The notes beneath the pieces were generated by a model that saw only the letters and a program-made list of their open reading frames with translations, made no database searches and was not told the DNA's origin. Position numbers and translations under genes: made by a program. A stretch of 63,445 bases of DNA, filler included, from Octopus bimaculoides (Eukaryota): the NCBI RefSeq assembly GCF_001194135.2. It is 4 parts of 4 records of this genome, joined end to end, with 100 filler letters (N's around TTAATTAATTAA, not from the genome) between each part and the next. Parts side by side here need not be neighbours in the genome. Positions count along the whole stretch, not along the records: positions 26,922 to 50,480 come from NC_068999.1; 3 more parts are not named here. One strand, written 5' to 3'. Shown here piece after piece: positions 19,454 to 50,252 of this stretch. The first letter of the stretch is position 1. Each line of letters opens with the position of its first letter.

Positions 19454-20744
19454 TGTTGTGGCGGACGCCCCCAAGTGAGAAGTGGGCTGGTCCACTGCTA
19501 ATAAATGGTAGACTGTCAGAGTCAGTAGGGTCGGTCGGCGAAAGTCCTTCGGACCAGTCCCGCGGAGATGAGGAAATACCTCATCATGGGACATATCAGT
19601 AGCAACAAGGATTCGTAGCTTGCAGTGAAAATGATTTTGAACAAGGAAACACAGTGACAAATGTATGAATCCTATCGAAGAAAGATTTTGAAAAAGAAAA
19701 AAGAAAAAGGTTCTGTGTGGAAAAAAAAAAAAAGTCCGTTCGAAGGCTTTATAAGTTAGGTCGCTATATTTAGTAGCACTACCAGTAATAATGTAAGACT
19801 TGGTACTACCTGCGGGCATTTTGAAAAAAAAAGCTATGGTTCTGTATGGAACAAATAATAATAATAATAATGATAATAATAATAATAATAATAAAAATAA
19901 ATCCGTGCAGAGGATTTAATAATTCTGTGTGGAACAAAAAAAAAAAAAAAATTCTGTTTAGAAGAAAGAAGAAAAAGAAATGAAAAAGAATTTACGATAC
20001 GTTTAAAGCGAGTCATGCAAGAAGATTTCAAACGTAAGCAGATATCATCTGTTGAAATTGAAGACAAACCAGTAGCTAAGAAAGTTAAAATGGACAAAGA
20101 AAACGCAAACTATTTTATGACTGAGAATATTAAACAAGTCCTCCTTGAAAAGATTCCAGATGAAATATCGATGGAAGTGACAAGTGAAGAACACGTTGTA
20201 GAAAATTCTGAAATTAGAGAATGTGAGTCATCTGTTACAGGAAAAAGGCTCTTCTATTGAAAATGCTTCGTTGAGGAATCGTTCTCATGCAAACACTTTA
20301 AAAGATAATGTAAGTTTGCAGGTAACTGATCCAGTTTCTGCCGAGAAAAGTGTAACGAAAAGAAAAGTCGTAGAATTGAAAAGAAAAGAAAAAAAAAATA
20401 TATGCTGTGAAGAAATAATAAATATAATTCTGTGTGGAACAGGAAAAAAATTAAATAAGAGAAAACTAGTAAGTCCGTGTGAAGGATTTGTATGGAAGTG
20501 AAATACAACATCGACTCGAATAAATAGCAAAACTGGAGCTTATTTGAAAGAAAAAGTATTTTGTGTGGAAGAAAAAGAAATAGTAATGAAAAAAAAAAAA
20601 TGTGTTTGAAAAAAATACCAAAGTGAGGAGGTGTTGTGGGCTGGTCCACTGCTAATAAATGGTGGACTGTCAGAGTCAGGCGAAGGTGTGCCGTTCGGAC
20701 CAGTCTCGCAGACATGAAATACGTCGTAATAATGGGACATATCA
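19454..20744 (+). mobile_element. TRIM/LARD-like non-autonomous LTR element
   Basis: Direct repeats 19454..19598 and 20632..20744, both TGTTGTGG...GGGACATATCA and containing AATAAA; purine tract AAAGTGAGGAGG immediately before the 3' LTR; flanks ATACC/ATAAC (5 bp TSD, 1 mismatch). Confidence 0.75.
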
Positions 20745-29190: not shown

Positions 29191-30591
29191 AAGTGCGCCC
29201 CACATATTGTTTCATCGTAACTTTAGAAAAAATGGATATTTTTGGAAGAAGTTCTCCACAAATATTTTTCAGATGATGTAGATTCCAATTATCCGGCATA
29301 GCATTCAGAAAAATAGATATTTTTTTTAAATGAAATTTTCTACAAGTCTCTTTATTGTTCTGAACCGGGGTCCATATAAGATTTTGTTAAAATTTATCTG
29401 CAATAAATTGCTTATACTTCTACAATACACAAGACATTTTAACAATTTTTTAAATACAATTTCTAATAATATCTAATTATAAAAATATAGGATATTTTTA
29501 AACAGCGAATGGTTATGGGGGTCCAGCAAAGAAAAATAGGAATCAAGGTTCTGAAAGTGAAAAATGGTCGAGAATTTCAAGTTTCATTATATAATTATTC
29601 ATGCAATATGTGTCAGTATGTGTGTGTGCGCGCGCTCACTTTTCTTTTTATTTTTTTTGTTTCACATTCTTCCGATATAATTGTGATCTACACCAGCTGG
29701 AANNNNNNNNNNNNNNNNNNNNNNNNNNNNNNNNNNNNNNNNNNNNNNNNNNNNNNNNNNNNNNNNNNNNNNNNNNNNNNNNNNNNNNNNNNNNNNNNNN
29801 NNNNNNNNNNNNNNNNNNNNNNNNNNNNNNNNNNNNNNNNNNNNNNNNNNNNNNNNNNNNNNNNNNNNNNNNNNNNNNNNNNNNNNNNNNNNNNNNNNNN
29901 NNNNNNNNNNNNNNNNNNNNNNNNNNNNNNNNNNNNNNNNNNNNNNNNNNNNNNNNNNNNNNNNNNNNNNNNNNNNNNNNNNNNNNNNNNNNNNNNNNNN
30001 NNNNNNNNNNNNNNNNNNNNNNNNNNNNNNNNNNNNNNNNNNNNNNNNNNNNNNNNNNNNNNNNNNNNNNNNNNNNNNNNNNNNNNNNNNNNNNNNNNNN
30101 NNNNNNNNNNNNNNNNNNNNNNNNNNNNNNNNNNNNNNNNNNNNNNNNNNNNNNNNNNNNNNNNNNNNNNNNNNNNNNNNNNNNNNNNNNNNNNNNNNNN
30201 NNNNNNNNNNNNNNNNNNNNNNNNNNNNNNNNNNNNNNNNNNNNNNNNNNNNNNNNNNNNNNNNNNNNNNNNNNNNNNNNNNNNNNNNNNNNNNNNNNNN
30301 NNNNNNNNNNNNNNNNNNNNNNNNNNNNNNNNNNNNNNNNNNNNNNNNNNNNNNNNNNNNNNNNNNNNNNNNNNNNNNNNNNNNNNNNNNNNNNNNNNNN
30401 NNNNNNNNNNNNNNNNNNNNNNNNNNNNNNNNNNNNNNNNNNNNNNNNNNNNNNNNNNNNNNNNNNNNNNNNNNNNNNNNNNNNNNNNNNNNNNNNNNNN
30501 NNNNNNNNNNNNNNNNNNNNNNNNNNNNNNNNNNNNNNNNNNNNNNNNNNNNNNNNNNNNNNNNNNNNNNNNNNNNNNNNNAAACTGTTCA

Positions 30592-32237: not shown

Positions 32238-33410
32238 TTAAGGCTTATTTAATTTTCCCATGAACAAAATCATTTGTGATCTTTTGTCAACAATAAGAAA
32301 CATAAAAGGATGGTTTGCAATGAATCTCAATGGTGGTATCCTCACCATTGCACATCGAGTCATGATAACTGCTGCTGTCGCTGCTGCTGCTTCTGTACCC
32401 TCTTCATTGACCTCCACAAATGCTTTATGAAATACTTCACTGACAAAGAGAGGGCAATTGCTAATACCTGACAAATCAGCTTTCTGTTCGTCAAAAAGGT
32501 CAGCCATTCCTAAAGATGACAGTTGTTGTCTTAATGCAAAACTAGATTCCATTTTGAATTTTGGTAGCTTTACTTCAACTTTCCCAGAGTGGAATTGCTG
32601 GTTTTCTATAATAGACTGAAGAAAATCTGACGATAAACTTTTATGTAATGCTTCAATGCCATCAATCTGGTTTGGTAAGATTATAAACATACTCAGGCAA
32701 GAACCTTCATAAGGTAACTCTAGAATCTGGCAATCGTGTTTAGAATCCTGTCTCAAACTGAATGATTTATTTATAAACATCATATCAACTGAAACTTTCT
32801 CTGTTGAACTTTTGAAAAAATCTTCAGATTTTGTCAAACTGGGATTAAATTTATTGCTCCAGTTTCCTTTAAAATATATAGCATTCACTAAAACAAGAGC
32901 AGTATTAGAATTTAAATAACCATCAGGAATAATATCTTTGATTTTACCTTTTGTAATATTTTGAACCCAGTTATTAATTTTCGCAGCAGCATCTTTCGGT
33001 GCCTGGCCAAAATCCAAATTTTCACTGAGAGAATGATACATCTCCTTGATTTCTTCAAAATATTTAGTGAGTAACTCAAAATTAATGTTGACATACATAC
33101 GGTTTGCAGTATGTAAGTCAAAATTTTTAATTTCTTCCAACAGACTAATATATTTTCTATGGGCATCGTGAACCACTTTTTTTGTTGATCCATCAATCTG
33201 GAGTGTTTTCTCCATCTGTGAAGCAGTATTTTGTCTGGCTCCAGCGTATACCATCAATAAAGCAACAGAAATACTGTAAGGAGATATAAATATATTTCTG
33301 TCTTCACCTTCATATGTTTTAAGGACATTGTACAAGTCATGTGTAAATTTAGTTAAAGATGAACCAACACTCAATACATTTTCATCCAATTTTTCAATAT
33401 TTCTCGCCAT
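32238..33410 (-). CDS. Serpin A: intracellular (ov-serpin/clade B-like) inhibitory serpin, 390 aa, single coding exon
   Basis: SPYSI, NAIYFKGNW, KLPKFK, hinge EEGTEAAAATA, FIANHPFMFLI; no signal peptide; P1-P1' Arg-Cys by hinge count; splice acceptor 21 nt upstream of the ATG (exon starts 33431). Confidence 0.97.
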   Translation of the reverse strand: MARNIEKLDENVLSVGSSLTKFTHDLYNVLKTYEGEDRNIFISPYSISVALLMVYAGARQNTASQMEKTLQIDGSTKKVVHDAHRKYISLLEEIKNFDLHTANRMYVNINFELLTKYFEEIKEMYHSLSENLDFGQAPKDAAAKINNWVQNITKGKIKDIIPDGYLNSNTALVLVNAIYFKGNWSNKFNPSLTKSEDFFKSSTEKVSVDMMFINKSFSLRQDSKHDCQILELPYEGSCLSMFIILPNQIDGIEALHKSLSSDFLQSIIENQQFHSGKVEVKLPKFKMESSFALRQQLSSLGMADLFDEQKADLSGISNCPLFVSEVFHKAFVEVNEEGTEAAAATAAVIMTRCAMVRIPPLRFIANHPFMFLIVDKRSQMILFMGKLNKP

Positions 33411-33548
33411 AGTGTTTGATGTAACAAATATCTGAAATGGTAAATGAAAATAATAAACATTATTTTAGCTGTTCAAAACATTGTTCTGTAATAATATTTC
33501 AGAGAAATTTTTCATCAAACGGTTGTTTATTTAATACTTATTAGTATA

Positions 33549-33945
33549 GGTGCAGGAGTGGCTGTGTGGTAAGTAGCTTGCTTACCAACCACATGGTTCC
33601 GGGTTCAGTCCCACTGTGTGGCATCTTGGGCAAGTGTCTTCTACTATAGCCTCAGGCCGACCAAAGCCTTGTGAGTGGATTTGGTAAACGGAAACTGAAA
33701 GAAGCCTGTCGTATATTTGCATATATATGTGTGTGTGTCTGTGTTTGTCCCCCTAGCATTGCTTGACAACCGATGCTGGTGTGTTTATGTCCCCGTCACT
33801 TAGCGGTTCGGCAAAAAAAGAGACCAATAGAATAAGTACTAGGCTTACAAAGAATAAGTCCTGGGGGTCGATTTGCTCGACTAAAGGCAGTGCTCCAGCA
33901 TGGCCGCAGTCAAATGACTGGAACAAGTAAAGAGAGAGAGAGAGA
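33549..33945 (+). mobile_element. SINE family 1, full length, in the serpin A 5'UTR intron
   Basis: A-box GTGGCTGTGTGG, B-box GGTTCAGTCCC, CORE-like CTTGGGCAAGTGTCTT, LINE-like tail. Confidence 0.92.
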
Positions 33946-35210: not shown

Positions 35211-36332
35211 CAATGTACTAACAATTCTACCAACTCACTGCCTTTTCTGTGCTTTATATTGGAATGCATCTTATTACTTCAACATAAAAACCACATGGTG
35301 TCTACATAAAACAAGATGAACTGTCATGAACTTCCTTTAACTTCCTATGGCCAACACATTATTATGAAATAAAATATTAGCTGTCACAATCTGAGTGTTG
35401 CCCAATAGAGAAATATCTGTTCACAGGAGGAGTAATATGACACCAGACATGGACACATATGGAAGTTTCTTAATTGAAACAATTGTCATGTTGCTATACA
35501 ACGGCTGTGAACTTCAAATGAAAGAATGTGGTGATATAGTAAGTAGGTGTTTGTAGTGTATGACCAGGGAAGGGGTGCATGGTAACTAACTCATACATGA
35601 TCACCATCAATTGACACAGGGTGAAGGTGAACCCTGGCTCCACATGCCAGCTTTGAGTACTAAACATCCATCCATGCAGAATGTCTGATTGTTGAACTTT
35701 TACATTATTTTTCTAAAGACGTCCACAAACTCTCATTTCCTACTCCATCTACAACACCAAAAATAACTGAATCCTCAAAGACTACTTTTATAGATACCAT
35801 TTATGCATCATACAATCGCAGTCTCCAATTGGTTTATTCCTTTATTAATTTTTCATTTTATTTGCTCATTTCACCTGTTGAACCATCCATGGGGTCCATT
35901 TTACTTCAAAACTCTACTTCGTCCAACTCACCTCATTTTAATGTCCACTTTTCCATACCTGTATGGGTCAATTGAAGGTAATTAATTCTGTCCTACCAAA
36001 TTTTAAACCATCTCACTATAGAAACCAGTCTGTTGACATTGTTTTGTTTGCTAGTTTCCTTTGTGTCATGATTCACAATGAAAAGAAATACAACCATTAA
36101 AAAAATCAATATAAAGTGTTTCAGGTGAAGATGTTAAGTAATTTGAACTTCGCGTTAATAAGAGAAAAATCAATACTTTTCGCAAATAACTTATTCAAAA
36201 CAACTTGCTTGCTTTTCTCAGCTGCTTGTAAACTCTTTCTGTGGATATAATTGTAAAAACTTTACACAAATCCCAACACAAATCTGAAATCAATCCTCGG
36301 TCAAGTCTGTATTTGGATAAGTCTTAACAAAC

Positions 36333-36396
36333 ATGTTAAAGAAACGAGATGGATTTGTCTTGCTGTTCATAGTTGTTACCCTACAAACTATAACAG
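36333..36396 (+). CDS. Serpin B exon 1: signal peptide MLKKRDGFVLLFIVVTLQTIT(E)
   Basis: Basic n-region then hydrophobic h-region; donor ACAG|GTATGT is phase 1 and matches the phase of the TTTTTATAG| acceptor (exon starts 41088), giving a GAA codon. Confidence 0.8.
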
Positions 36397-37039
36397 GTAT
36401 GTTTGTGTTTATACATACATACATATACACATACACATTCACCACTAATTTGTATTATATTTTAGTATACATACATGTAATATATTGTTTGTTTTTATGT
36501 TCAGTTATAATAAAAACAATTTTACTTTAATCTGATGGGTCACTCTATACTTTGTAGAGTACAAATTTATTAGTCTTAAGCAAGAATGCTGTTGACTGTG
36601 ACTTCGAAGTTTTTGCAAGCTAAGCCATCATTGGATGCGAAGCATTAAAGTTAGTTTTAACTTCATATATTTTCTTTGGGTGTGTGGGTTTGAGTTGGGT
36701 GGTAATTAGGTTTTTGTGGTAGGTTGTTATGGACAAGTGTTTTGGAAAAATTTTTAATTGATTAAATTAGGGGTTATGTTAGTGTTAAGAGTTCATTCAT
36801 GCATGTAGAATTTTGTCAGGTAAGCAGGTGTGAGAGTATTTTTATTGCTTTTGGTATTATTGGATTTAATCATTTTGCTTTGACAATGTAAAAATCAAAG
36901 GTACAAAGTCCAGTATTTAAGGACCATTAGTAATTGGGTGTGTCAACTTTGTTTTCCAAAAGGATGTAGGTGATAAGTTTAAACCCTTTAGCATTTAAAC
37001 TGATCATATCCGTGTACCATATATGATGCCTGGACATTA

Positions 37040-37260
37040 GGGAAATATGTCCAAAACATCACCAATTGAGACTAAGGACATTATCCAACCATCTTGCTCT
37101 TGGTCTACCCCTATATCTCCTGCTGGTTGGCTCAGCTTGAAGAATCCATCTTGCAATTCTTTTCTGTAACCTCTTGAATCAGGGAAGTAGTGGCTCAATT
37201 GGAAGAGACTCCTTAATCTCTTAGCTATGTACCCTTTTGATTAACATTACTCCAGAAGTT
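37040..37260 (-). mobile_element. RTE (Expander-like) 3' fragment
   Basis: KRIARWILQAEPTSRRYRGRPRARWLDNVLSLNW; same family as 4330. Confidence 0.7.
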
Positions 37261-37899
37261 CTTTGGGGGAACCTGTGTATCACATGTGACACACAGGACA
37301 GGTAAAGTGTTAAACTGACACCTGATCAATCAAACCTTAGTCATAAAACAAAGGTAGAAGTTTCAATAAAACTATTCACGTGATCTCACTTTGTTTATTC
37401 AGATAAATAAGAATTAGGCCAGACTAATGCAAATAGCAGAGAGAACTGGAATAATAAAGAAATATAACTGAGCAATAGAAAGGAAATAATGTAGGTTAGG
37501 GTTGATGAAATAGTTGGGCTTTAAAATTGGAGATTGAATACGTGAATCACATGAAAATGAAGGCCATGATGGAATTTTGTTGTATATTGAAAAGACTGGG
37601 TAAGCTAATATAATGGAGAACTGTACAAAGGAATTTCGTTGAGATTTGCTTTAAAAATATACTGCAATACAATAAAGAAAGGCAAATTAAATGTTTCTCT
37701 GTGATTATACAATATATTTAGAGCATGGCATTTATTCATTTATTTCTGAAATTATATAACCAAAACATCGTGAGAAAATCTCAGAAATTCTTTGCTAAGC
37801 AAATATTTCAACTCATTTCTTTTAATCTGATTACGAATTAATCAACCACTCACATTTTATAAGCTAATCAATTATCCATATGTTATCAGTTAATCCATC

Positions 37900-38340
37900 C
37901 ATTTTGTCTGTCCACTATTCCTGGAAAGGTTGTGGAGGTAGAGTACTTATGCACCTCTTTCATAGGGTCCTATCAGAAGTAACCGTTATTAGACTTTGCA
38001 GCTGGATTCCTAAGCATGTCCAATTGAGATAATGGATATTATTCATCTCATTCTTGGTGTGCTCCCAGGTTTCCTGCAAAATTCTAATCACATTCCCAGA
38101 GTGCCAGAGCTGCAGAGAAGAAGCAACTCAACATTGAAGAGACAGAGAGACTTCCTGATTTCCATACTTTGCACCAATAAGTAGCATTACTCCAGAGATC
38201 CTTGAAAGGAACTCCATTTTAGACATTGTATTTGTGACTACTCTTTCAGTATTCAACGGACAACCATAGATGAGGATAGACAACGGAAACCAAATTGAAG
38301 ACAGCAAGTTTGGCATATCTACCAACCTTTCCTTTTATGA
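37900..38340 (-). mobile_element. RTE (Expander-like) 3' fragment
   Basis: ILIYG..TERV..MEFLSRISGV..LWHSGNVIRI. Confidence 0.65.
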
Positions 38341-38689
38341 GAATCACATGCCAGAGCTGGTGCATTAAGCTTATCAATCAGTCATATATTATAAGTAAAT
38401 CAATAATCAAATATTCATTTATTTAACTTTATTTCTTAGATCTGCTCAACCAGAAAGCTACAGCCTTATTTTAAATAGAATTTTATCAGGTATATTTCCA
38501 ATGCCAGAGGTTGGGTAACTTGTTGGGGTATTAGGGGAGAATCACAACTGTCTAAGAAACTGTGTGATGTGGTTTCTGTGCTAAGAAAAATATATATTTT
38601 TTTTTTGGCTACTTGCTAAGTCTGGAGGAAGGGGCAGCGCCGATGACACTTGTGGGCACTCCAAAACTGGTGAGCCTGATTGCATTAAT

Positions 38690-39290
38690 GTTCTAATCAG
38701 AATGTTGCAGATGAACACTGGAAGGAAGAACATGAGCAGGAAGAAAATTCCGAGGGGAGAATGTTCAGAGGGGAAAAAAGATTGGGTGCACTAGTAGGTG
38801 CAGAGGTCAGAAATAGAGATCCTTGAATGAGAGGTGGCAAGGTGAGTGAGTCAGAGATGACTGGGTGGTGGAGAAATGAGTGGATCAGCCAACTTAGAGG
38901 AGATGAGGCTGTTATAATAGTGATAGAAAAGACAAAGAGAGCAGAGACAGAGCAGCTGTGGGGCCAGAGACAGAAGTGATAGAATATCAATTAGCTGAGG
39001 TCCCATCTTAGAACGGGGTCCAGGATGTCAGTAGTATCATTCTTGATGTTGGAGTGGTACTCCATTTTAAGCTTCACACGAGTCTTTTGGAGTGTCGGTA
39101 GCTGTTGGGGCCTGAAACATTTTCTGGCTCCAAAGTGGGCTTAGCTATATTCATGATGTGCTTTCACCAAAATAGATCCTCAGTGATAATCAAGTCAAAA
39201 ATCTGGAGTGACTGTGAAAACTCTGAGTGATACTCATGTTATGAGAACGTGGTGCTGTAGTGTTTTCTTAATATGAGGGAGTGCTTGAAT
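38690..39290 (-). mobile_element. CR1/L2-group RT C-terminal fragment
   Basis: Degenerate translation ITEDLFW*KHIMNIAK, ARKCFRPQQL, FYHYYN. Confidence 0.55.
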
Positions 39291-39344
39291 TTTTTTTTTT
39301 TTTTTAATGTTAAAAGAGACATGATTGGTATGGCCTTGGGTGTC

Positions 39345-39560
39345 TCTCTTTTACTCTTTTACTTGTTTCAGTCATTTGACTGCGGCCATGCTGGAGCACC
39401 GCCTTTAGTCGAGCAAATCGACCTCAGGGCTTATTCTTTGTAAGCCTAGTACTTATTCTATCGGTCTCTTTTTGCCGAACCGCTAAGTTACGGGGGACAT
39501 AAACACACCAGCATCGGTTGTCAAGCAATGCTAGGGAGACAAACACAGACACACAAATAT

Positions 39561-39618
<58 letters not shown>

Positions 39619-39780
39619 GACGGGCTTCTTTCAGTTTCCGTTTACCAAATCCACTCACAAGGCTTTGGTCGGCCCAAGGTTATAGTAGAAGACACTTGCC
39701 CAAGTTGCCACGCAGTGGGACTGAACTCGGAACCATGTGGTTGGTAAGCAAGCTACTTACCACACAGCCACTCCTGCGCC
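39345..39780 (-). mobile_element. SINE family 1, full length, in the serpin B intron
   Basis: Near-identical reverse complement of the 33549 copy, with a longer internal TA/CA tract. Confidence 0.93.
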
Positions 39781-39909
39781 TTAAAAAATTTTATAAAATC
39801 AACACAGATTTGGCTTGTGATATACACATACTCAAAGTCTTGTTCTAAATGAATCTGAAGCTGGCAAGGTGAAATACACAATCATCCTTTCATTATTGTT
39901 CTTTAGAAT

Positions 39910-40110
39910 AAAGCAGCAGCTGGCAGAATTATTAACACACCAGACAAAATGCCTAACAACACTTCATCTGTCATTACGTTCTGATTTCAAATTCCACTGA
40001 AGTTAACATTGCCTTCCATTCTTTCAGAGTCAATGAAATAAGTACCAGTTGAGCACTGGGGTCAATGTAATCGACAAGCACACTCCCCTAAAACTTTTCT
40101 GGCCTTGTGC
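39910..40110 (+). mobile_element. SINE family 2, diverged
   Basis: AGCTGGCAGAATT head, AAATAAGTACCAGTTGAGCACTGGGGTC core. Confidence 0.75.
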
Positions 40111-40443
40111 CTATAATAGAAAGGATTATTGTACTTCTGAGGTCAAAGACTTCTAAAGTACAGTAGTGTTTGTGAACGAGTAAGATAACCACAGAGAAAG
40201 TAAGTGTAATAAGATAAGTAGATAGTGAGTAATAATCAGATGGGATAATCAGATGAGAAAGAAAGGCTTCATTTTGCTAACTGATCTCACACTGGTAACT
40301 AGGTTTCCCTCCTTATAATTAATAATAGTTATTGTTATTTCTACCATTGACTTACTTCTCTCTCTCTCTCTTTTTACATACATATATAAAAGCTAGTGTC
40401 ACTACCTCTATCTTTCCCACTATATGAGCCAGTGTTCTCCCCA

Positions 40444-40495
<52 letters not shown>

Positions 40496-40577
40496 GAGAG
40501 AGAGAGAATGAGATATAGTCGAAGCAACAGAGATACTCAAGGGCTGAGAGTTTTGTGTGTTAGTAGCAATGATCTCA

Positions 40578-40609
<32 letters not shown>

Positions 40610-40689
40610 GTAGAGAGAGAGAGAGAGAGAGTCTCTCTGTTGCTTCTGCTCTATATATCTCTATATCAGAGAACTCACTAGAGCTGACG

Positions 40690-40875
40690 GCATGGGAAGA
40701 AAAAAAAACACCCCGTATATGATGTAAAGTGGTTGGCATTAGGAAGGGGGCATCCAGCTGTAGAAACAATACCAAAGCAAAAGTAAAGGAGCACAATGCA
40801 GTTCTTGGACCCATCAGACCTTATCAACTCATCCAACCCATGCCAACATGGAACATGGACAGTAAATGATGATTA
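40690..40875 (+). mobile_element. RTE 3'UTR terminal fragment
   Basis: GTGGTTGGCATTAGGAAGGGGCATCCAGCTGTAGAAAC ... CATGGAAC..GGAC..TAAATGATGAT; related copies at ~48830-49070, 49930-50090 and 51350-51650. Confidence 0.75.
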
Positions 40876-41087
40876 CTTAATAGTTCTATTGTAATTGCTG
40901 ATCTAAATATTGCTTTAAAAAGATTTATGAAGCTGCTTCAAGGTGATAATTTTGGGGTGAGAATACAATTAAATCAATTATGGAATTAATGAATAAGTTT
41001 TTGGTGTTCATTATTAATTTGGTCTCAAATTATTTTGTGCTTGTGGAATTCTTAAATAAACTAAATTGCACTTTTTAATTTTTATAG

Positions 41088-42262
41088 AAATTAATAGCAG
41101 GAAGATGAAATCATCTAACCAGCACCAAGAGATTAAAAACCTGGCTGCATCAATTGATTATTTTACATCCAGCCTTTTTCAAGATATGGTCATAGGAATC
41201 AACGAAAATGTCTTCATGTCCCCCTTCAGTGTTGCTACCATTTTATCAATGGTTTATTTGGGAGCAAAACAAAACTCAGCTGAACAGTTGAAAAATGTTT
41301 TGAATGTAACTTCAACACCAAATGCATTAGCTTTGGCTTATAAAAAATATTTTTCAGTTCAGAAGAATTCAAATGAAGCTAACATGAGTAAATCGGTAAA
41401 TCGTTTGTATGTTGATGATAAATTCCCAATATTGAAAAGCTATAAGCACAAGATTTCAAACTATTTTTTTACGGACATTAAAAATGTAGATTTCATAAAA
41501 AAGGCTGAAAGAATAAGAATTGATATTAACAAGTGGGTTAAGAAAGAGACTTATAACGAAATCACAGATCTGTTACCAAGTAAAAGTTTGTCCTCTGATA
41601 CAGTGCTACTTCTCGTTAATGCCATGCACTTTGAAGGAATGTGGGCTGAAAGATTCCCAGAAAAAGTAACGTCATCTAGAGAGTTTCATTTAAGTTCTGG
41701 CAAGACTATATCTTATGATTCTATGTTTATATCTGAAGATTTTAATACAAAAATAAGCCATAACTATAAAGCTGTAGAGTTACCTTACATGGGGGAGAAA
41801 TTTAGTATGTTTGTAATTCTTCCTAATAAAATGGATGGTCTTGCTGCTTTAGAGAAGGAAATTAATGCAGAATTTCTCAAAGAAATTAAAGAGAGAAAAG
41901 GGTTTAAACAATTATCTCTCGAGTTATATTTACCAAAGTTTCATTTTCAAAGTGCTTTCGAGTTATCAGATACTTTACAAAATCTTGGTCTTTCTGATAT
42001 TTTTGATGCCAGCAAAGCCAATTTATCAGGAATAAGTAGTCGGAAGAATTTGTATGTGAATAAATTCTTTCATAAAACATTTATTGATGTAAATGAAAAA
42101 GGAACAGAAGCTGCAGCTGCAAGCGGAGAAGTGGTAATTAATCCAGTATCAGCCCAGACGGGAACAATATTTGATGTTAATCACCCCTTCATATTTTTAA
42201 TTGCTGATAGAAGAATTAAAATGATTTATTTCATCGGCAAGGTAACAAACCCAGCAGATTAA
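41088..42262 (+). CDS. Serpin B exon 2: serpin domain of a probably secreted serpin (412 aa when spliced to exon 1)
   Basis: SPFSV, NAMHFEGMW, LYLPKF, hinge EKGTEAAAASG, FDVNHPFIFLI; N-glycosylation sequons NVT, NMS, NLS; internal Met at 41105; AATAAA at 42391. Confidence 0.95.
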
Positions 42263-43822: not shown

Positions 43823-46811
43823 TTACAGTTTTATAGGAAGTTATAAAAAAAAACAAAAAAAAACAAACTGTGTCCATTATCGAATATCTGAAATACACGT
43901 ACCTGTTGGTGTTGTAGCCTGTTGTTAAATATTATTAACGAAGTGATAGAAGGGCAGAGACTGAGTATTTATTAATAGACTTAATCTTCGCTCGTTTCAA
44001 AGTACAAACTTACAAAACTATATAGTTGTCCGTCTTGATGAAAATTAAAAGAAATGTAAATGAAACAATTGGTAAATAAGAATCGAAGTTGTATACTAAT
44101 GAAGTGACAGACACTGTCGTTTTTTAATTTATCCAACGTTAAAACCCACGATTTTGCACGGATCGAGATTTTTTTTTCAATTTAAAGTAGTCGGACCAGT
44201 CACAGGGTGACTGTTTAGAAGGAAAAGCTATAATTAGATTATTTGACAAAAACTGCGAGGGAGTGATGTCATTGGATTTTCTTTTATCGGGGATATTTCT
44301 CATCATTCACCGTACCAAAACTATTTGTTACCGTTGATTTGAGATCGTTTCAACGAAATTCATTCTCTGAAATCTACTATGCATTAAAAAAACTCAAAAA
44401 GAACACGCAAATAAATACAGAAAAAATTAGAAAACTCCTAAATATGCCGTAGCAGTATCTTTTATTTTAATAAAGCCGCAGAGAGGTTTTAAACTCTTTT
44501 GGAAAAATATAAACAGTAACGGTATACTTATAAGTGTCCCAACTATCACTGAATTGGTTCCTCATAACTTTCAGAAAAATTGGTATTTTGGTTTTCCTTT
44601 TTCCAATGAAAATTTCTACGGCGAACACTTTTCAGGAAAATGGCTTTTTTAATTTTTTTTTTTAATAAAAATTTCTACAAATTCTGTTCGGGGTACTATT
44701 CAAGAAGAGTGGTCCCATTCAAGAAGAGTGGTCCCAGTGCGCGCACTCTCACACTCGCGAAAGCGAGTGTGACTAGTCATGCGCAAAACAAGTATGCGAG
44801 TTTTTTTGGTGATAAATAAAAGATAAAATTGTCAACTTTATTATATTCATTATATATATTGTTTCCGGTATAAATTAATATTGACACATTGGAAGAAAAA
44901 AAAAATTGCCGGTATGCCACATCAGATAGTTTGAGAAGCACTGTTACGTATGAAAATGAAATTTCCATATAATCGGAATCTATTAAAAAATGAATTATCC
45001 ACATACAAAACATTGGGATACCCAAAAAAGTCAAATAACCTCCAAATTAAACGTGGGGAACCCTCTTCCTGGAAGACTTCTTGTTGACATTCTTCAAATG
45101 AAACTTCTTCGAAGCTGAGCCATCAAACAACACAGAACTTACCATTCTTTTCTAATTTATGAACGCTTCTCAACGATACAAGCCTCGCTTGTGACCGTTC
45201 GATCTGCTAGAGAGAACAGCAGTTCAATCTCCCTCAAATCGCATCCTACTGACTTGGGGGAAGAACACATTTGAAAATTTAGTCAGTCCTACGTAGCCCT
45301 AAAATAACGGGATGGTCGTTGCTGGAGAGCTTTTGACACTAAGTGTTCTCAATTAGAACTAGCTTGTGATTAAACAATAAACACCGTCTTGGTAGTTCAT
45401 ATATAGTAACATAATAGGGATCTTCCTGATTGGGCGGGCGCCACNNNNNNNNNNNNNNNNNNNNNNNNNNNNNNNNNNNNNNNNNNNNNNNNNNNNNNNN
45501 NNNNNNNNNNNNNNNNNNNNNNNNNNNNNNNNNNNNNNNNNNNNNNNNNNNNNNNNNNNNNNNNNNNNNNNNNNNNNNNNNNNNNNNNNNNNNNNNNNNN
45601 NNNNNNNNNNNNNNNNNNNNNNNNNNNNNNNNNNNNNNNNNNNNNNNNNNNNNNNNNNNNNNNNNNNNNNNNNNNNNNNNNNNNNNNNNNNNNNNNNNNN
45701 NNNNNNNNNNNNNNNNNNNNNNNNNNNNNNNNNNNNNNNNNNNNNNNNNNNNNNNNNNNNNNNNNNNNNNNNNNNNNNNNNNNNNNNNNNNNNNNNNNNN
45801 NNNNNNNNNNNNNNNNNNNNNNNNNNNNNNNNNNNNNNNNNNNNNNNNNNNNNNNNNNNNNNNNNNNNNNNNNNNNNNNNNNNNNNNNNNNNNNNNNNNN
45901 NNNNNNNNNNNNNNNNNNNNNNNNNNNNNNNNNNNNNNNNNNNNNNNNNNNNNNNNNNNNNNNNNNNNNNNNNNNNNNNNNNNNNNNNNNNNNNNNNNNN
46001 NNNNNNNNNNNNNNNNNNNNNNNNNNNNNNNNNNNNNNNNNNNNNNNNNNNNNNNNNNNNNNNNNNNNNNNNNNNNNNNNNNNNNNNNNNNNNNNNNNNN
46101 NNNNNNNNNNNNNNNNNNNNNNNNNNNNNNNNNNNNNNNNNNNNNNNNNNNNNNNNNNNNNNNNNNNNNNNCTTTTTATGAAAACAAGTGGCGCCCGCCA
46201 AATCAGAAGGATCCCAAAAGTGGATAAAACAAATTCTCATACGGGAGGGGGGGAGATTCTAACTGGGGGATGCTGAGCACCCCATAGCTACGTGCCTGAT
46301 TGTGTGCACGTGCTTGTCTTTATGTGTGTGTCTGTGAAGAGAGAAAGAGAGAGAGAGAGAGCGTGACAACGTAAAGAGAAGCAACGCAAACGCAAAATTA
46401 TTTTCCAGGGGCAATAACTTTCTCTAACTTCTTCAGGGTGATGTATATTTATCCCCCTTAGTATTTATACCGATTGCAAAGACTCCAGTTTGTTTTAAGA
46501 ATAATGTAAAGTCAATTCTAGCAGGATTTCAAATGAGAACTATGGTAAACGAAACTAACTTCGGTTAATACAACGGGAACGTGGGTAGAGGAGTTCGGAA
46601 AATTCACAAGATCCGAATTTTTCCCTTGTAACTTTTAGGAAAATGGGGCTTTTTATCAATGAAATTTGATAGAAATACCTTTCAAACGGCAAACATGACA
46701 ATTATAAAGAAATTTGTGGAGAGAATCTTTTCCAAGAGATGGAGAGTGGACTTGGGCAAATACACAAGATCCGAACTATTTCCTCGTAACTTTAAGGATA
46801 ATTGAGATCTT

Positions 46812-47318
46812 TCAGTCTTGTTTGATATTTCCGTCTTGTTTGATGTTTCTCTCTTGTTTAATCTTTCTGTGTTGTTCGACCTTTCTGTCATGTTTGATCT
46901 TTCTGTCTTGTTTGGTATTTCCGTCTTGTTTGATCTTTCTGTCTTGTTTGATATTTTCATCTTGTTTGATCTTTCTGTCTTGTTTGATATTTTCGTCTTG
47001 TTTGATATTTCCGTCTTGTTTGATCTTTCTGTCATGTTTGATCTTTCTGTCATGTTTGATCTTTCTGTCTTGTTTGATATTTTCATCTNNNNNNNNNNGA
47101 TATTTTCGTCTTGTTTGATATTTCCGTCTTGTTTGATCTTTCTGTCATGTTTGATCTTTCTGTCATGTTTGATCTTTCTGTCTTGTTTGATATTTTCATC
47201 TTGTTTGATCTTTCCGTGTTGTTTGATATTTTCGTCTTGTTTGATAGTTTCGTCTTATTTGGTATTTCCGTCTTGATTGATATTTCCGTCTTGATTGATC
47301 TTTCTGTCTTGTTTGACA
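46812..47318. repeat. 18 bp minisatellite, ~27 copies (TTTGATCTTTCTGTCTTG and variants)
   Basis: Strict 18 bp period on both sides of a 10-N gap. Confidence 0.95.
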
Positions 47319-47634
47319 TGTGTGTCTCGTATGATTCAGGTGACTGGTTTTTTCTTGTTTCCACTTGTAAATTTACGAGATGAACTTTTATATGGGTAAA
47401 CAACTTCTCTGACTTCTTCTCTTTTAAATGAAACTTCAAATTATTCAATCCACTGTTGTGAAAATTTTCCTCATGTAAAAGCTTAAATCTGAAACAAAAT
47501 AAATATATCCTGATAAAACAACATTTAATTCAGTGATATTATGCATACGATATACATGTATAATATAAATATAATTCACCCACCCACACACATATTATAT
47601 ACACAAACATACATATGTGTATATGTATGTGTGC

Positions 47635-49233: not shown

Positions 49234-49638
49234 TCTTTATTCTTTACTTGTTTCAGTCATTTGACTGCGGCCATGCCGGAGCACCACCTTTAGTCGAATC
49301 AAATCGACACCAGGACTTATTCTTTGTAAGCCTAGTACTTATTCTATCGGTCTCTTTTTGCCGAACTATTAAGTTACAGGGCCCTAAATACACCAGCATC
49401 GGTTGTCAAGCGATGTTGGGGGGACAAACACAGATACACAACATATACACACATACATATATATATACATATATACGATGGGCTACTTTCAGTTTCCATC
49501 TACCAAATCCACTCACAAGGCTTTGGTCGGCCCGAGGCTATAGTAGAAGACACTTGCCCTAGGTGCCACGCAGTGGGAATGAACCCGGAACCATGTGGTT
49601 GGTAAGCAAGCTACTTACCACACAGCCACTCCTGCGCC
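49234..49638 (-). mobile_element. SINE family 1, full length
   Basis: Near-identical to the 39345 copy. Confidence 0.92.
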
Positions 49639-50252
49639 TATTAGATATAGATAATGATTTCAACAGACAAAAAATAGTTAAAGACAGAATAAGCTTCATA
49701 ATGTAATGTTTTTGTACATTTTACCTTTGATTGTTATGATGATGAAGATGATGATGATGCTGATGACAAGGATGATGACGATGATGATGGCCATCATTAT
49801 AATTACCATCACCCGCATCATCATCCTCAACACTACCATCACCATCCATCTGTGTGTGTGTGTGTCTTTGTATGTATGTATGTATGTATGTATGTATATA
49901 TATATATATATATGTATGTATATAGTCTGTCAAGTGGTTGGCATTAGGAAGGGCATCCAGCTGTAGAAACCACGTGAAAGAAGATATTAGAATTTGGCAC
50001 AGCATTCTTCCTTATCTGTTCATGTTAAACCATTCAACCCAGAGCAGTATACTGAAAGAGATATTAAATGATGATGATGATGATGACAATAACTATGGTT
50101 GACATTATAAGAATGTAGTAAGATTTGAGAGAACATCTGGAAAGCGGACCTTAAACGATGATGATATATATATATATATATATATTATGATTGATCGTTG
50201 ACTGAACACTATTCAATTTTTTTTCTCCGTGTTTTTCTCCTTGTCTCCGTAT

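What the first reader, a model, noticed from the sequence alone, without database searches (positions are those of the whole stretch)
36333..41107. Hidden signal-peptide exon converts serpin B into a secreted protein
The ORF track starts serpin B at a TTG inside an intron. A 64 nt exon 4.7 kb upstream encodes a typical leader and splices in phase (G+AA). Serpin B still has a Met 17 nt into exon 2, like serpin A's ATG 21 nt after its acceptor. Inference: secretion was gained by recruiting a coding exon in front of an ancestral cytosolic gene, and skipping it could still yield a cytosolic isoform from Met 41105.
Basis: partly seen in the sequence, partly recalled or inferred. Interest (0 to 1): 0.72.

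Follow-up and report, generated by a model that had tools for sequence, protein, structure and literature searches.

The report
Octopus serpin signal-peptide exon, already annotated
The 64-base upstream exon is real and gives this Octopus bimaculoides serpin a secretion leader, but the same gene model is already in RefSeq and the orthologue's cDNA was cloned in 2015, so this is correct but ordinary.

Summary
ATG 36333 to 36396 (64 nt, CAG|GTATGT) splices in phase 1 to 41088 (ttttatag|AA). The product starts MLKKRDGFVLLFIVVTLQTIT-E-INSRKM. The bacterial-style ORF really does start at a TTG (41066) inside the intron.

The piece is Octopus bimaculoides chromosome CM046619.1. The exact 412-aa spliced protein is already RefSeq XP_014782339.1, "leukocyte elastase inhibitor isoform X1". 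A 385-aa product starting at Met 41105 is also in NCBI. The Amphioctopus fangsiao entry A0A023NGS8, which I take to be the cloned OoSerpin cDNA, has the same leader and junction.

The leader has signal-peptide features: net charge +2 before the core, an 11-residue hydrophobic core, and T at -3 and -1. SignalP was not available.

The evolutionary inference is not supported as written:
- The same layout (64-70 nt leader exon, phase-1 intron, exon 2 starting 17 nt before a conserved Met) occurs in a 62%-identical paralogue and in Argonauta. It therefore predates serpin B.
- Serpin A is only about 40% identical to B, and its 5' intron is in a different phase.
- Bivalve relatives carry leaders.

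A leaderless isoform is plausible. O. sinensis isoform X2 uses an alternative first exon that is conserved here at 35941-35977. This is annotation only, and Drosophila Spn42Da is a known precedent.

The parts
36333..36396 (+). Coding part of serpin B exon 1. It is 64 nt and encodes MLKKRDGFVLLFIVVTLQTIT plus the first base (G) of a split Glu codon. The donor is CAG|GTATGT.
   Evidence: Sequence read. Splicing it to exon 2 gives exactly P0121 = XP_014782339.1. It is 64/64 nt identical in both O. sinensis copies. The leader is 16/21 residues identical in A. fangsiao A0A023NGS8. Signal-peptide features were computed.
36397..41087 (+). Phase-1 intron of 4691 nt. Most of 36765-40671 is absent from O. 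sinensis. It contains a SINE-like repeat (39343-39803) and TA/CA microsatellites.
   Evidence: The orthologous intron is 1649 nt in O. sinensis B1 and 7086 nt in B2. It is about 13.1 kb in the paralogue and about 5.8 kb in Argonauta (from the coordinates).
41088..42262 (+). Serpin B exon 2. It holds the whole serpin body in one coding exon, through the stop codon. The C-terminus is ...KVTNPAD, with no KDEL- or HDEL-type ending.
   Evidence: Pfam Serpin PF00079 matches residues 45-410, E = 4.5e-103.
41105..41107 (+). Internal Met codon, 17 nt into exon 2. It is the start of the 385-aa leaderless product.
   Evidence: P0001 (385 aa, sources NCBI and nr) starts here. The equivalent Met lies exactly 17 nt after the acceptor in paralogue P0005 and in Argonauta P0015. 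Leaderless models such as P0008, P0012 and P0128 start at it.
35941..35977 (+). Candidate alternative first coding exon: ATG...GAAG|GTAATT, phase 1, encoding MSTFPYLYGSIE plus G. It is the homologue of the first exon of O. sinensis isoform X2 (MSTFPCLHGSNE). It has no hydrophobic core.
   Evidence: Three of the 4 nucleotide differences from O. sinensis change the amino acid, so the peptide itself looks weakly constrained. The corresponding 403-aa O. bimaculoides product is not on record.
32238..33410 (-). Serpin A: a 390-aa leaderless serpin in one coding exon, head-to-head with serpin B. Its exon starts at 33431, 21 nt before the ATG.
   Evidence: Orthologues are O. sinensis P0143 and Argonauta P0022, both without a leader.
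35768..35800 (-). Candidate upstream exon of serpin A (MVSIKVVFEDS|GTTATT). It lies about 140 bp from serpin B's alternative first exon. The two genes probably share a bidirectional promoter region (inference).
   Evidence: It matches the N-terminal extension of the O. vulgaris model P0144.

Best explanation
This is an ordinary two-coding-exon gene of Octopus bimaculoides for a secreted inhibitory-type serpin. It appears to be the orthologue of OoSerpin from Amphioctopus fangsiao.

A 64-nt first coding exon (36333-36396) supplies a classical N-terminal signal peptide. A 4.7-kb phase-1 intron, enlarged by lineage-specific repeats, is removed. The whole serpin body lies in exon 2 (41088-42262). 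The nascent chain would enter the ER. The leader would be cut at or near the exon junction (TIT|EINS). With no ER-retention ending, the serpin would then be secreted.

The same locus probably also produces leaderless transcripts from alternative 5' exons, including 35941-35977. These would be translated from that exon's ATG or from Met 41105 and give a cytosolic form.

What is shown: the gene structure and its conservation. What is inferred: leader cleavage, secretion, and expression of the leaderless form.

The leader-exon layout is ancestral to the octopod B/C serpin clade, not an innovation of this gene.
For: Gene model:
- The exact 412-aa spliced product is XP_014782339.1 / A0A0L8GBY3.
- Its CDS range in GCA_001194135.2 CM046619.1 equals window 36333-42262.
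- A two-exon reconstruction reproduces the protein exactly.

Orthologues:
- A. fangsiao A0A023NGS8 (412 aa) reads MLKKRKGLALLFVVVTLQTLTEINSSKMKSS. It is 82% identical over 100% of the query.
- The O. sinensis X1 proteins have an identical leader and identical leader-exon DNA.

Signal-peptide features:
- n-region MLKKRD, net charge +2.
- h-region GFVLLFIVVTL. The best 8-residue Kyte-Doolittle mean is 3.79, against 2.95 for human alpha-1-antitrypsin and 1.1-1.7 for the leaderless N-termini.
- The five substitutions in A. fangsiao keep the core hydrophobic and the n-region positive.

Shared layout:
- Paralogue P0005 and Argonauta P0015 have the same architecture.
- The B + C/D clade has 100% bootstrap support.

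Leaderless forms:
- P0001 (385 aa), P0002 (403 aa, alternative exon), P0122 and P0125.
Against: - No transcript reads or proteomics for O. bimaculoides could be reached here. The RefSeq models are computational predictions.
- SignalP was not available. The leader was judged only by hydrophobicity, charge and the -3/-1 rule.
- Thr at -1 is allowed but not the commonest residue, so an uncleaved signal anchor is not excluded.
- The OoSerpin paper could not be read. The link between A0A023NGS8 and that cDNA is from memory. The database itself labels the entry only 'serpin [Amphioctopus fangsiao]'.
- The 403-aa alternative-exon product is not on record for O. bimaculoides. Which 5' exon the 385-aa isoform's mRNA uses is unknown.
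Confidence: 0.9

Rival explanations
1. Serpin B was a cytosolic, single-exon serpin like serpin A. It became secreted by capturing a new coding exon 4.7 kb upstream. Met 41105 is the relic of the original start codon.
For: - The Met is conserved 17 nt into exon 2, while its neighbours are not (INSRK-M-KSS, TIAYN-M-DSA, AIDFK-M-NPQ).
- Serpin A and its orthologues have no leader.
- The best-scoring vertebrate relatives are leaderless clade-B serpins.
- The leader sits in its own mini-exon, as exon capture would predict.
Against: - The layout is shared by B, C and the Argonauta member of the C/D clade. Any capture predates serpin B and the Octopus-Argonauta split.
- Serpin A is only 39.8% identical to B and is more similar to a bivalve serpin (46.6%).
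- Serpin A's intron is at a different position and phase.
- Bivalve and horseshoe-crab relatives have leaders.
- Deep tree nodes are unsupported, so loss of the leader in the A lineage is equally parsimonious.
- Most of the 4.7-kb distance is recent repeat insertion. The intron is 1.6 kb in O. sinensis.
Confidence: 0.25
2. The leaderless isoforms are annotation by-products, for example models built from unspliced or 5'-incomplete transcripts. Only the secreted form is made. The conserved Met is merely tolerated.
For: - All leaderless forms seen are predicted proteins.
- The peptide of the alternative exon is poorly conserved: 3 of 4 changes are non-synonymous.
- The O. bimaculoides 403-aa form is not on record.
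- The only Logan contig found is genomic or unspliced.
Against: - The alternative exon keeps its ATG, reading phase and GTAATT donor in both species.
- The Met is retained at the same nucleotide offset in lineages that are only 55-62% identical.
- Several paralogue models start exactly at that Met.
- Dual secreted and cytosolic serpin isoforms from alternative first exons are established in Drosophila.
Confidence: 0.4
3. The 64-nt ORF plus donor is a chance match in AT-rich DNA. Serpin B starts at Met 41105.
For: AT-rich sequence yields hydrophobic ORFs. About 3.5% of shuffles of the 10-kb upstream region give a phase-compatible candidate.
Against: - The same leader is joined to the same junction in the A. 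fangsiao protein entry.
- RefSeq models in two species use it.
- It is the only candidate on the + strand of the piece.
- The architecture recurs in a paralogue and in Argonauta.
Confidence: 0.01

Closest known systems
RefSeq XP_014782339.1 / UniProt A0A0L8GBY3, 'leukocyte elastase inhibitor isoform X1' [Octopus bimaculoides]
   Same: It is identical to the spliced product, residue for residue (412 aa). Its CDS range equals window 36333-42262.
   Different: Nothing differs: it is the same gene model. The name 'leukocyte elastase inhibitor' was assigned by similarity and suggests an intracellular clade-B serpin, which the leader contradicts.
OoSerpin of Amphioctopus fangsiao (Octopus ocellatus), UniProt A0A023NGS8; Wei et al. 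2015, Fish Shellfish Immunol 42:79-87 (reference seen; paper not held)
   Same: - Apparent orthologue: 82% identity over the full 412 aa.
- Same leader (16/21 identical) and the same T-E-INS junction.
- Groups with serpin B at 100% bootstrap.
   Different: - Different species.
- The title reports involvement in the antibacterial response.
- Linking the UniProt entry to this paper, and any biochemical detail, rests on my memory, not on a text read here.
Drosophila melanogaster Spn42Da (Serpin 4)
   Same: One serpin gene gives isoforms with and without a signal peptide by using an alternative N-terminal exon that encodes the leader (PMC4006314).
   Different: - Spn42Da also swaps four reactive-centre-loop exons.
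- Serpin B has a single body exon, and no extra loop cassettes were found in the piece.
- The octopus leaderless isoforms are only predicted.
Vertebrate clade-B (ov-)serpins: SERPINB1/LEI, MENT, SERPINB10
   Same: These are the best-scoring vertebrate hits, at 31-38% identity. Like them, the 385-aa form has no N-terminal extension.
   Different: - Clade-B serpins lack a cleavable N-terminal signal peptide, whereas serpin B's main product has one.
- The vertebrate genes have several coding exons (own knowledge), whereas here the body is one exon.
Bivalve ER-type serpins (Argopecten P0027 and P0033, Potamilus P0021)
   Same: N-terminal hydrophobic leader followed by a serpin body, 38% identity in the search.
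   Different: They end in RDEL or KDEL (ER retention). Serpin B ends in NPAD, so secretion is expected.

Membership tests
Serpin superfamily (Pfam PF00079) | Full-length match to the serpin domain profile above the curated cut-off | tested here: met
   P0121 residues 45-410 match profile positions 4-370 of 370, 345.8 bits against a cut-off of 27. Serpin A scores 407.8 bits.
Serpin superfamily (inhibitory type) | Hinge consensus in the reactive-centre loop (P17 Glu, P15 Gly, P14 Thr, small residues at P12-P9) | tested here: met
   Read directly from the sequence...NEKGTEAAAASGEVV.... The P1 residue could not be assigned with confidence, because the loop is about 3 residues longer than in alpha-1-antitrypsin (my own alignment from memory).
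Serpin superfamily (inhibitory type) | Forms a covalent complex with, and inhibits, a target protease | not testable with these tools
   Needs biochemistry.
Classical Sec-type cleavable signal peptide | Positively charged n-region followed by a 7-15 residue hydrophobic h-region at the extreme N-terminus | tested here: met
   n-region MLKKRD (net +2). h-region GFVLLFIVVTL (11 aa). Best 8-residue Kyte-Doolittle mean 3.79, higher than the alpha-1-antitrypsin leader (2.95) scored the same way.
Classical Sec-type cleavable signal peptide | c-region with small uncharged residues at -3 and -1 of a cleavage site | tested here: met
   ...LQ-T-I-T|E-INS has T at -3 and T at -1, read from the sequence. 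A. fangsiao has T-L-T|E. This is a rule-of-thumb reading only.
Classical Sec-type cleavable signal peptide | Positive call by a trained predictor (SignalP or Phobius) | not testable with these tools
   No such predictor is installed. Only heuristics were run.
Classical Sec-type cleavable signal peptide | Demonstrated cleavage and secretion | not testable with these tools
   Needs N-terminal sequencing or proteomics of haemolymph or secretions.
Dual-targeted serpin gene with an alternative leader exon (Spn42Da-like) | Leader encoded by a separate first exon, with an alternative first exon lacking a leader that joins the same acceptor | tested here: met
   Leader exon 36333-36396 and alternative exon 35941-35977 are both phase 1 and both join 41088. 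O. sinensis X1 and X2 use the two homologous exons with one acceptor.
Dual-targeted serpin gene with an alternative leader exon (Spn42Da-like) | Both isoforms actually expressed | not testable with these tools
   Only predicted proteins are on record. No RNA-seq data could be reached.
Dual-targeted serpin gene with an alternative leader exon (Spn42Da-like) | Alternative reactive-centre-loop exon cassettes | tested here: not met
   tblastn of serpin B against the piece finds only the two complete bodies, A and B, and no extra C-terminal cassettes. The resemblance is therefore limited to the N-terminal mechanism.
Clade-B / ov-serpins (implied by the RefSeq name 'leukocyte elastase inhibitor') | No cleavable N-terminal signal peptide | tested here: not met
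   The longest product carries a typical leader. Only the 385-aa form would fit.

The most novel reading that the evidence does not exclude
Octopod B/C-clade serpins may be systematically dual-targeted. In this reading every gene of the clade keeps a leader mini-exon, a phase-1 intron, and a start-competent Met exactly 17 nt into the body exon. Choice of promoter or first exon then decides between a secreted and a cytosolic inhibitor. The arrangement would have been kept since before the Octopus-Argonauta split. Serpin A and serpin B would share a bidirectional promoter region that could couple the choice.
Probability: 0.35. Interest if true: 0.3.

Novelty: already known. Interest (0 to 1): 0.12.

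Why it matters
It matters little beyond correct annotation.

For octopus immunology, the locus is the O. bimaculoides counterpart of OoSerpin, which has been linked to the antibacterial response.

The only open biological point is whether the conserved internal Met and the alternative first exons give a real cytosolic isoform. That would be a cephalopod parallel to Drosophila Spn42Da. It can be tested with existing public RNA-seq data.

Tried and rejected
- A search of the protein collection with only the first 60 residues of the spliced product, meant to catch transcript-derived fragments spanning the junction, returned nothing. No candidate shared enough indexed words. This says nothing either way.
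- The single Logan contig carrying a close homologue (L001, SRR11869391) contains the intron sequence upstream of the acceptor. It is genomic or unspliced and gives no junction evidence.
- Looking up O. sinensis isoform X2 by exact sequence failed, because only the longest product per gene is indexed. The locus was reached through X1 instead.
- The OoSerpin paper is not in the library. Only citations of it were found.
- DNA conservation between O. bimaculoides and O. sinensis does not separate exon from flank. The flanks are already 85-95% identical, so the 64/64 identity of the leader exon is only weakly informative.
- I asked whether the two O. sinensis proteins with identical leaders share one leader exon. 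They do not. The second gene is an inverted duplicate about 11.5 kb away with its own leader exon.
- The deep nodes of the neighbour-joining tree have 8-46% bootstrap support, so I drew no conclusion on the ancestral state.
- The bacterial promoter/terminator scan and the RNA-family tools were not used, because they do not apply to this eukaryotic question.


Full report
**1. What is in the sequence**

- An ATG at 36333 opens a 64-nt stretch: ATGTTAAAGAAACGAGATGGATTTGTCTTGCTGTTCATAGTTGTTACCCTACAAACTATAACAG. It ends at 36396 and is followed by GTATGT.
- At 41070-41087 a T-rich tract ends in ...ttttatag, so the next exon begins at 41088.
- The last G of the first exon plus AA makes GAA (Glu). 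The frame then reads INSRK, Met (41105, 17 nt into the exon), and continues through a complete serpin to the stop at 42262.
- The mechanical ORF list starts this ORF at TTG 41066, which is inside the intron.
- Serpin A lies on the other strand (32238-33410, 390 aa). Its exon starts at 33431, 21 nt before its ATG.

**2. Is it more than chance?**

From sequence alone the evidence is moderate.
- I used generic criteria: ATG, open frame, hydrophobic core with Kyte-Doolittle mean of at least 3 over 8 residues within the first residues, net positive n-region, and a reasonable GT donor 45-105 nt downstream. By these criteria it is the only candidate on the + strand of the 23.5-kb piece.
- Only 3.5% of 200 dinucleotide-preserving shuffles of the 10 kb upstream of exon 2 produce any phase-compatible candidate.
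- The criteria were written after seeing the candidate, so I give this little weight.

**3. Decisive evidence from related sequences**

The piece is Octopus bimaculoides, assembly GCA_001194135.2, chromosome CM046619.1.
- The exact 412-aa spliced product is already in NCBI, UniProt and EukProt as XP_014782339.1 / A0A0L8GBY3, "leukocyte elastase inhibitor isoform X1".
- The CDS range recorded for it is 5930 nt and corresponds to window 36333-42262.
- A two-exon reconstruction reproduces the protein residue for residue.
- The Amphioctopus fangsiao entry A0A023NGS8 (412 aa) begins MLKKRKGLALLFVVVTLQTLTEINSSKMKSS. It has the same leader, the same junction codon and the same downstream Met, and is 82% identical over 100% of the query.
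  - From memory, this is the RACE-cloned OoSerpin cDNA of Wei et al. 2015. I saw the reference but could not read the paper.
- O. sinensis has two copies. Their X1 proteins carry an identical leader, and their leader exons are 64/64 nt identical to the window.

**4. Is the leader a signal peptide?**

No trained predictor was available. By simple measures it has the classical three parts (cleavage site read).
- n-region: MLKKRD, net charge +2.
- h-region: GFVLLFIVVTL, 11 residues. Its best 8-residue hydropathy is 3.79. The same measure gives 2.95 for the human alpha-1-antitrypsin leader and 1.1-1.7 for the three leaderless N-termini at this locus.
- c-region: QTIT|E, with Thr at -3 and -1.
- The five substitutions in A. 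fangsiao (D6K, F8L, V9A, I13V, I20L) keep the n-region positive and the core hydrophobic.
- The protein ends in ...KVTNPAD, with no KDEL-type ending. Its bivalve relatives end in RDEL or KDEL.

Secretion is therefore the likely fate. This is inferred, not shown.

**5. The intron**

The two loci are colinear from serpin A through serpin B at 85-95% identity.
- Window 36765-40671 has almost no counterpart in O. sinensis, where the intron is 1649 nt.
- The extra DNA includes one of three copies of a roughly 420-460 bp SINE-like repeat, plus TA/CA microsatellites.
- The "4.7 kb upstream" distance is therefore largely recent repeat insertion, not a sign of a distant captured exon.

**6. How old is the arrangement?**

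The same layout is found in three genes.

| Gene | Leader exon | Donor | Intron | First 17 nt of exon 2, then ATG |
|---|---|---|---|---|
| Serpin B | 64 nt | CAG\|GT | phase 1 | AAATTAATAGCAGGAAG ATG |
| Paralogue P0005 (same chromosome, 62% identical in the search) | 70 nt | CAG\|GT | phase 1 | ACACTATCGCATACAAT ATG |
| Argonauta hians P0015 (55% identical) | 70 nt | CAG\|GT | phase 1 | AAGCCATTGATTTTAAA ATG |

- In a neighbour-joining tree built from the body only, B and the C/D paralogues form a clade with 100% bootstrap support. The Argonauta protein nests inside C/D, also at 100%.
- The leader exon therefore predates the B/C duplication and the Octopus-Argonauta split.
- Serpin A belongs to a separate lineage that also has an Argonauta orthologue (P0022). 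It is 39.8% identical to B over the trimmed alignment, which is less than its identity to a bivalve serpin (46.6%).
- Serpin A's 5' intron differs in offset (21 nt against 17 nt) and in phase (0 against 1).
- The non-cephalopod relatives retrieved from Argopecten, Potamilus and Tachypleus have leaders. The "leaderless" Pecten model starts at a Met that aligns inside the Argopecten leader, so it is probably truncated.
- Deep nodes have 8-46% bootstrap support.

The claim that secretion was gained in front of an ancestral cytosolic gene is therefore neither supported nor excluded. If it happened, it happened long before serpin B existed. Serpin A is not a good stand-in for that ancestor.

**7. 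The leaderless isoform**

Points in favour:
- NCBI also holds a 385-aa product of this gene that starts at Met 41105 (P0001).
- O. sinensis isoform X2 (P0002, 403 aa) begins MSTFPCLHGSNE-EINSK. Its first exon lies 318 nt upstream of the leader exon and joins the same acceptor in phase 1.
- The window keeps the homologous exon intact at 35941-35977: ATG TCC ACT TTT CCA TAC CTG TAT GGG TCA ATT GAA G|GTAATT.
- The internal Met is conserved at the same nucleotide offset across genes that are only 55-62% identical, while its neighbours vary.
- Several paralogue models start exactly at that Met.

Points against:
- Three of the 4 nucleotide differences in the alternative exon between the two species change the amino acid, so its short peptide looks unconstrained.
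- The corresponding 403-aa O. bimaculoides protein is not on record.
- Everything here is predicted annotation. I could reach no junction-level RNA evidence.

Overall this is suggestive of a used alternative start, but not shown.

**8. Comparison with what is known**

- The gene model itself is known: it is in RefSeq.
- The orthologue appears to have been cloned and linked to the antibacterial response (title of Wei et al. 2015).
- The octopus locus lacks Spn42Da's alternative reactive-loop cassettes.
- The RefSeq name "leukocyte elastase inhibitor" implies an intracellular clade-B serpin. That name reflects similarity only, and the X1 product fails the clade's "no signal peptide" criterion.

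**9. Verdict**

- Observation: confirmed exactly.
- Interpretation: partly supported. A secreted product is very likely. A cytosolic isoform is plausible and already annotated. The evolutionary story is not supported as framed.
- Novelty: already known.
- Interest: low. The one residual question is whether octopod B/C serpins are systematically dual-targeted through first-exon choice. It is modest in scope and has a clear precedent.

Noticed in passing
window 35768-35977, both strands: Serpin A and serpin B are arranged head-to-head. A candidate serpin A upstream exon on the minus strand (35800..35768, MVSIKVVFEDS|GT) matches the N-terminal extension of an O. vulgaris model. It lies only about 140 bp from serpin B's alternative first exon (35941-35977). 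The two genes probably share a bidirectional promoter region. The head-to-head arrangement is conserved in O. sinensis (L002).
   Followed up: partly
window 33522-33945, 39343-39803, 49236-49641: Three copies of a SINE-like repeat of about 420-460 bp, 83-87% identical to each other. One copy is inverted and lies inside the serpin B intron. A copy also occurs in the O. sinensis locus (L002, about 20244-20626). Its spurious ORFs read FQSFDCGHAGA(P/L)PLVEQ.
   Followed up: partly
window 46680-47493, minus strand: A beta-1,4-galactosyltransferase-like terminal coding exon lies at about 47272-47493 and runs into a coding minisatellite (a repeated TERSNK/ISNK-type motif, units about 80-86% identical). 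It lies tail-to-tail with serpin B. The O. vulgaris protein model P0144 (543 aa) looks like a chimera: a serpin A body fused to such a galactosyltransferase C-terminus.
   Followed up: partly
L002 and L006 (O. sinensis CM016877.1, about 48.85-48.874 Mb): O. sinensis carries an inverted duplicate of the whole serpin B unit about 11.5 kb beyond the first copy. It has its own identical 64-nt leader exon and a 7.1-kb intron. The two copies are each other's closest relatives in the tree, which points to a lineage-specific duplication or gene conversion. No second copy is visible in the O. bimaculoides piece up to 50480.
   Followed up: partly
window about 29700-30590 and about 45430-46230: Runs of N (assembly gaps) lie inside the piece. 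ORFs spanning them in the mechanical list are artefacts.
   Followed up: no
P0026 (Pecten maximus) compared with P0027 (Argopecten irradians): The Pecten 'leaderless' serpin model starts MAFHQSPRSATVF. This aligns with MAFVQQSQSSAKVF inside the Argopecten leader, so the Pecten model is probably truncated at its 5' end and not truly cytosolic.
   Followed up: no
P0012 and P0014 (O. bimaculoides and O. sinensis 'serpin B3 / B11-like', on a different chromosome): These members of the leader-bearing C/D clade are annotated without a leader and start exactly at the conserved Met (MDSAKKQ / MDSEKGQ). They may be copies that lost the leader exon, or they may be incomplete models.
   Followed up: no
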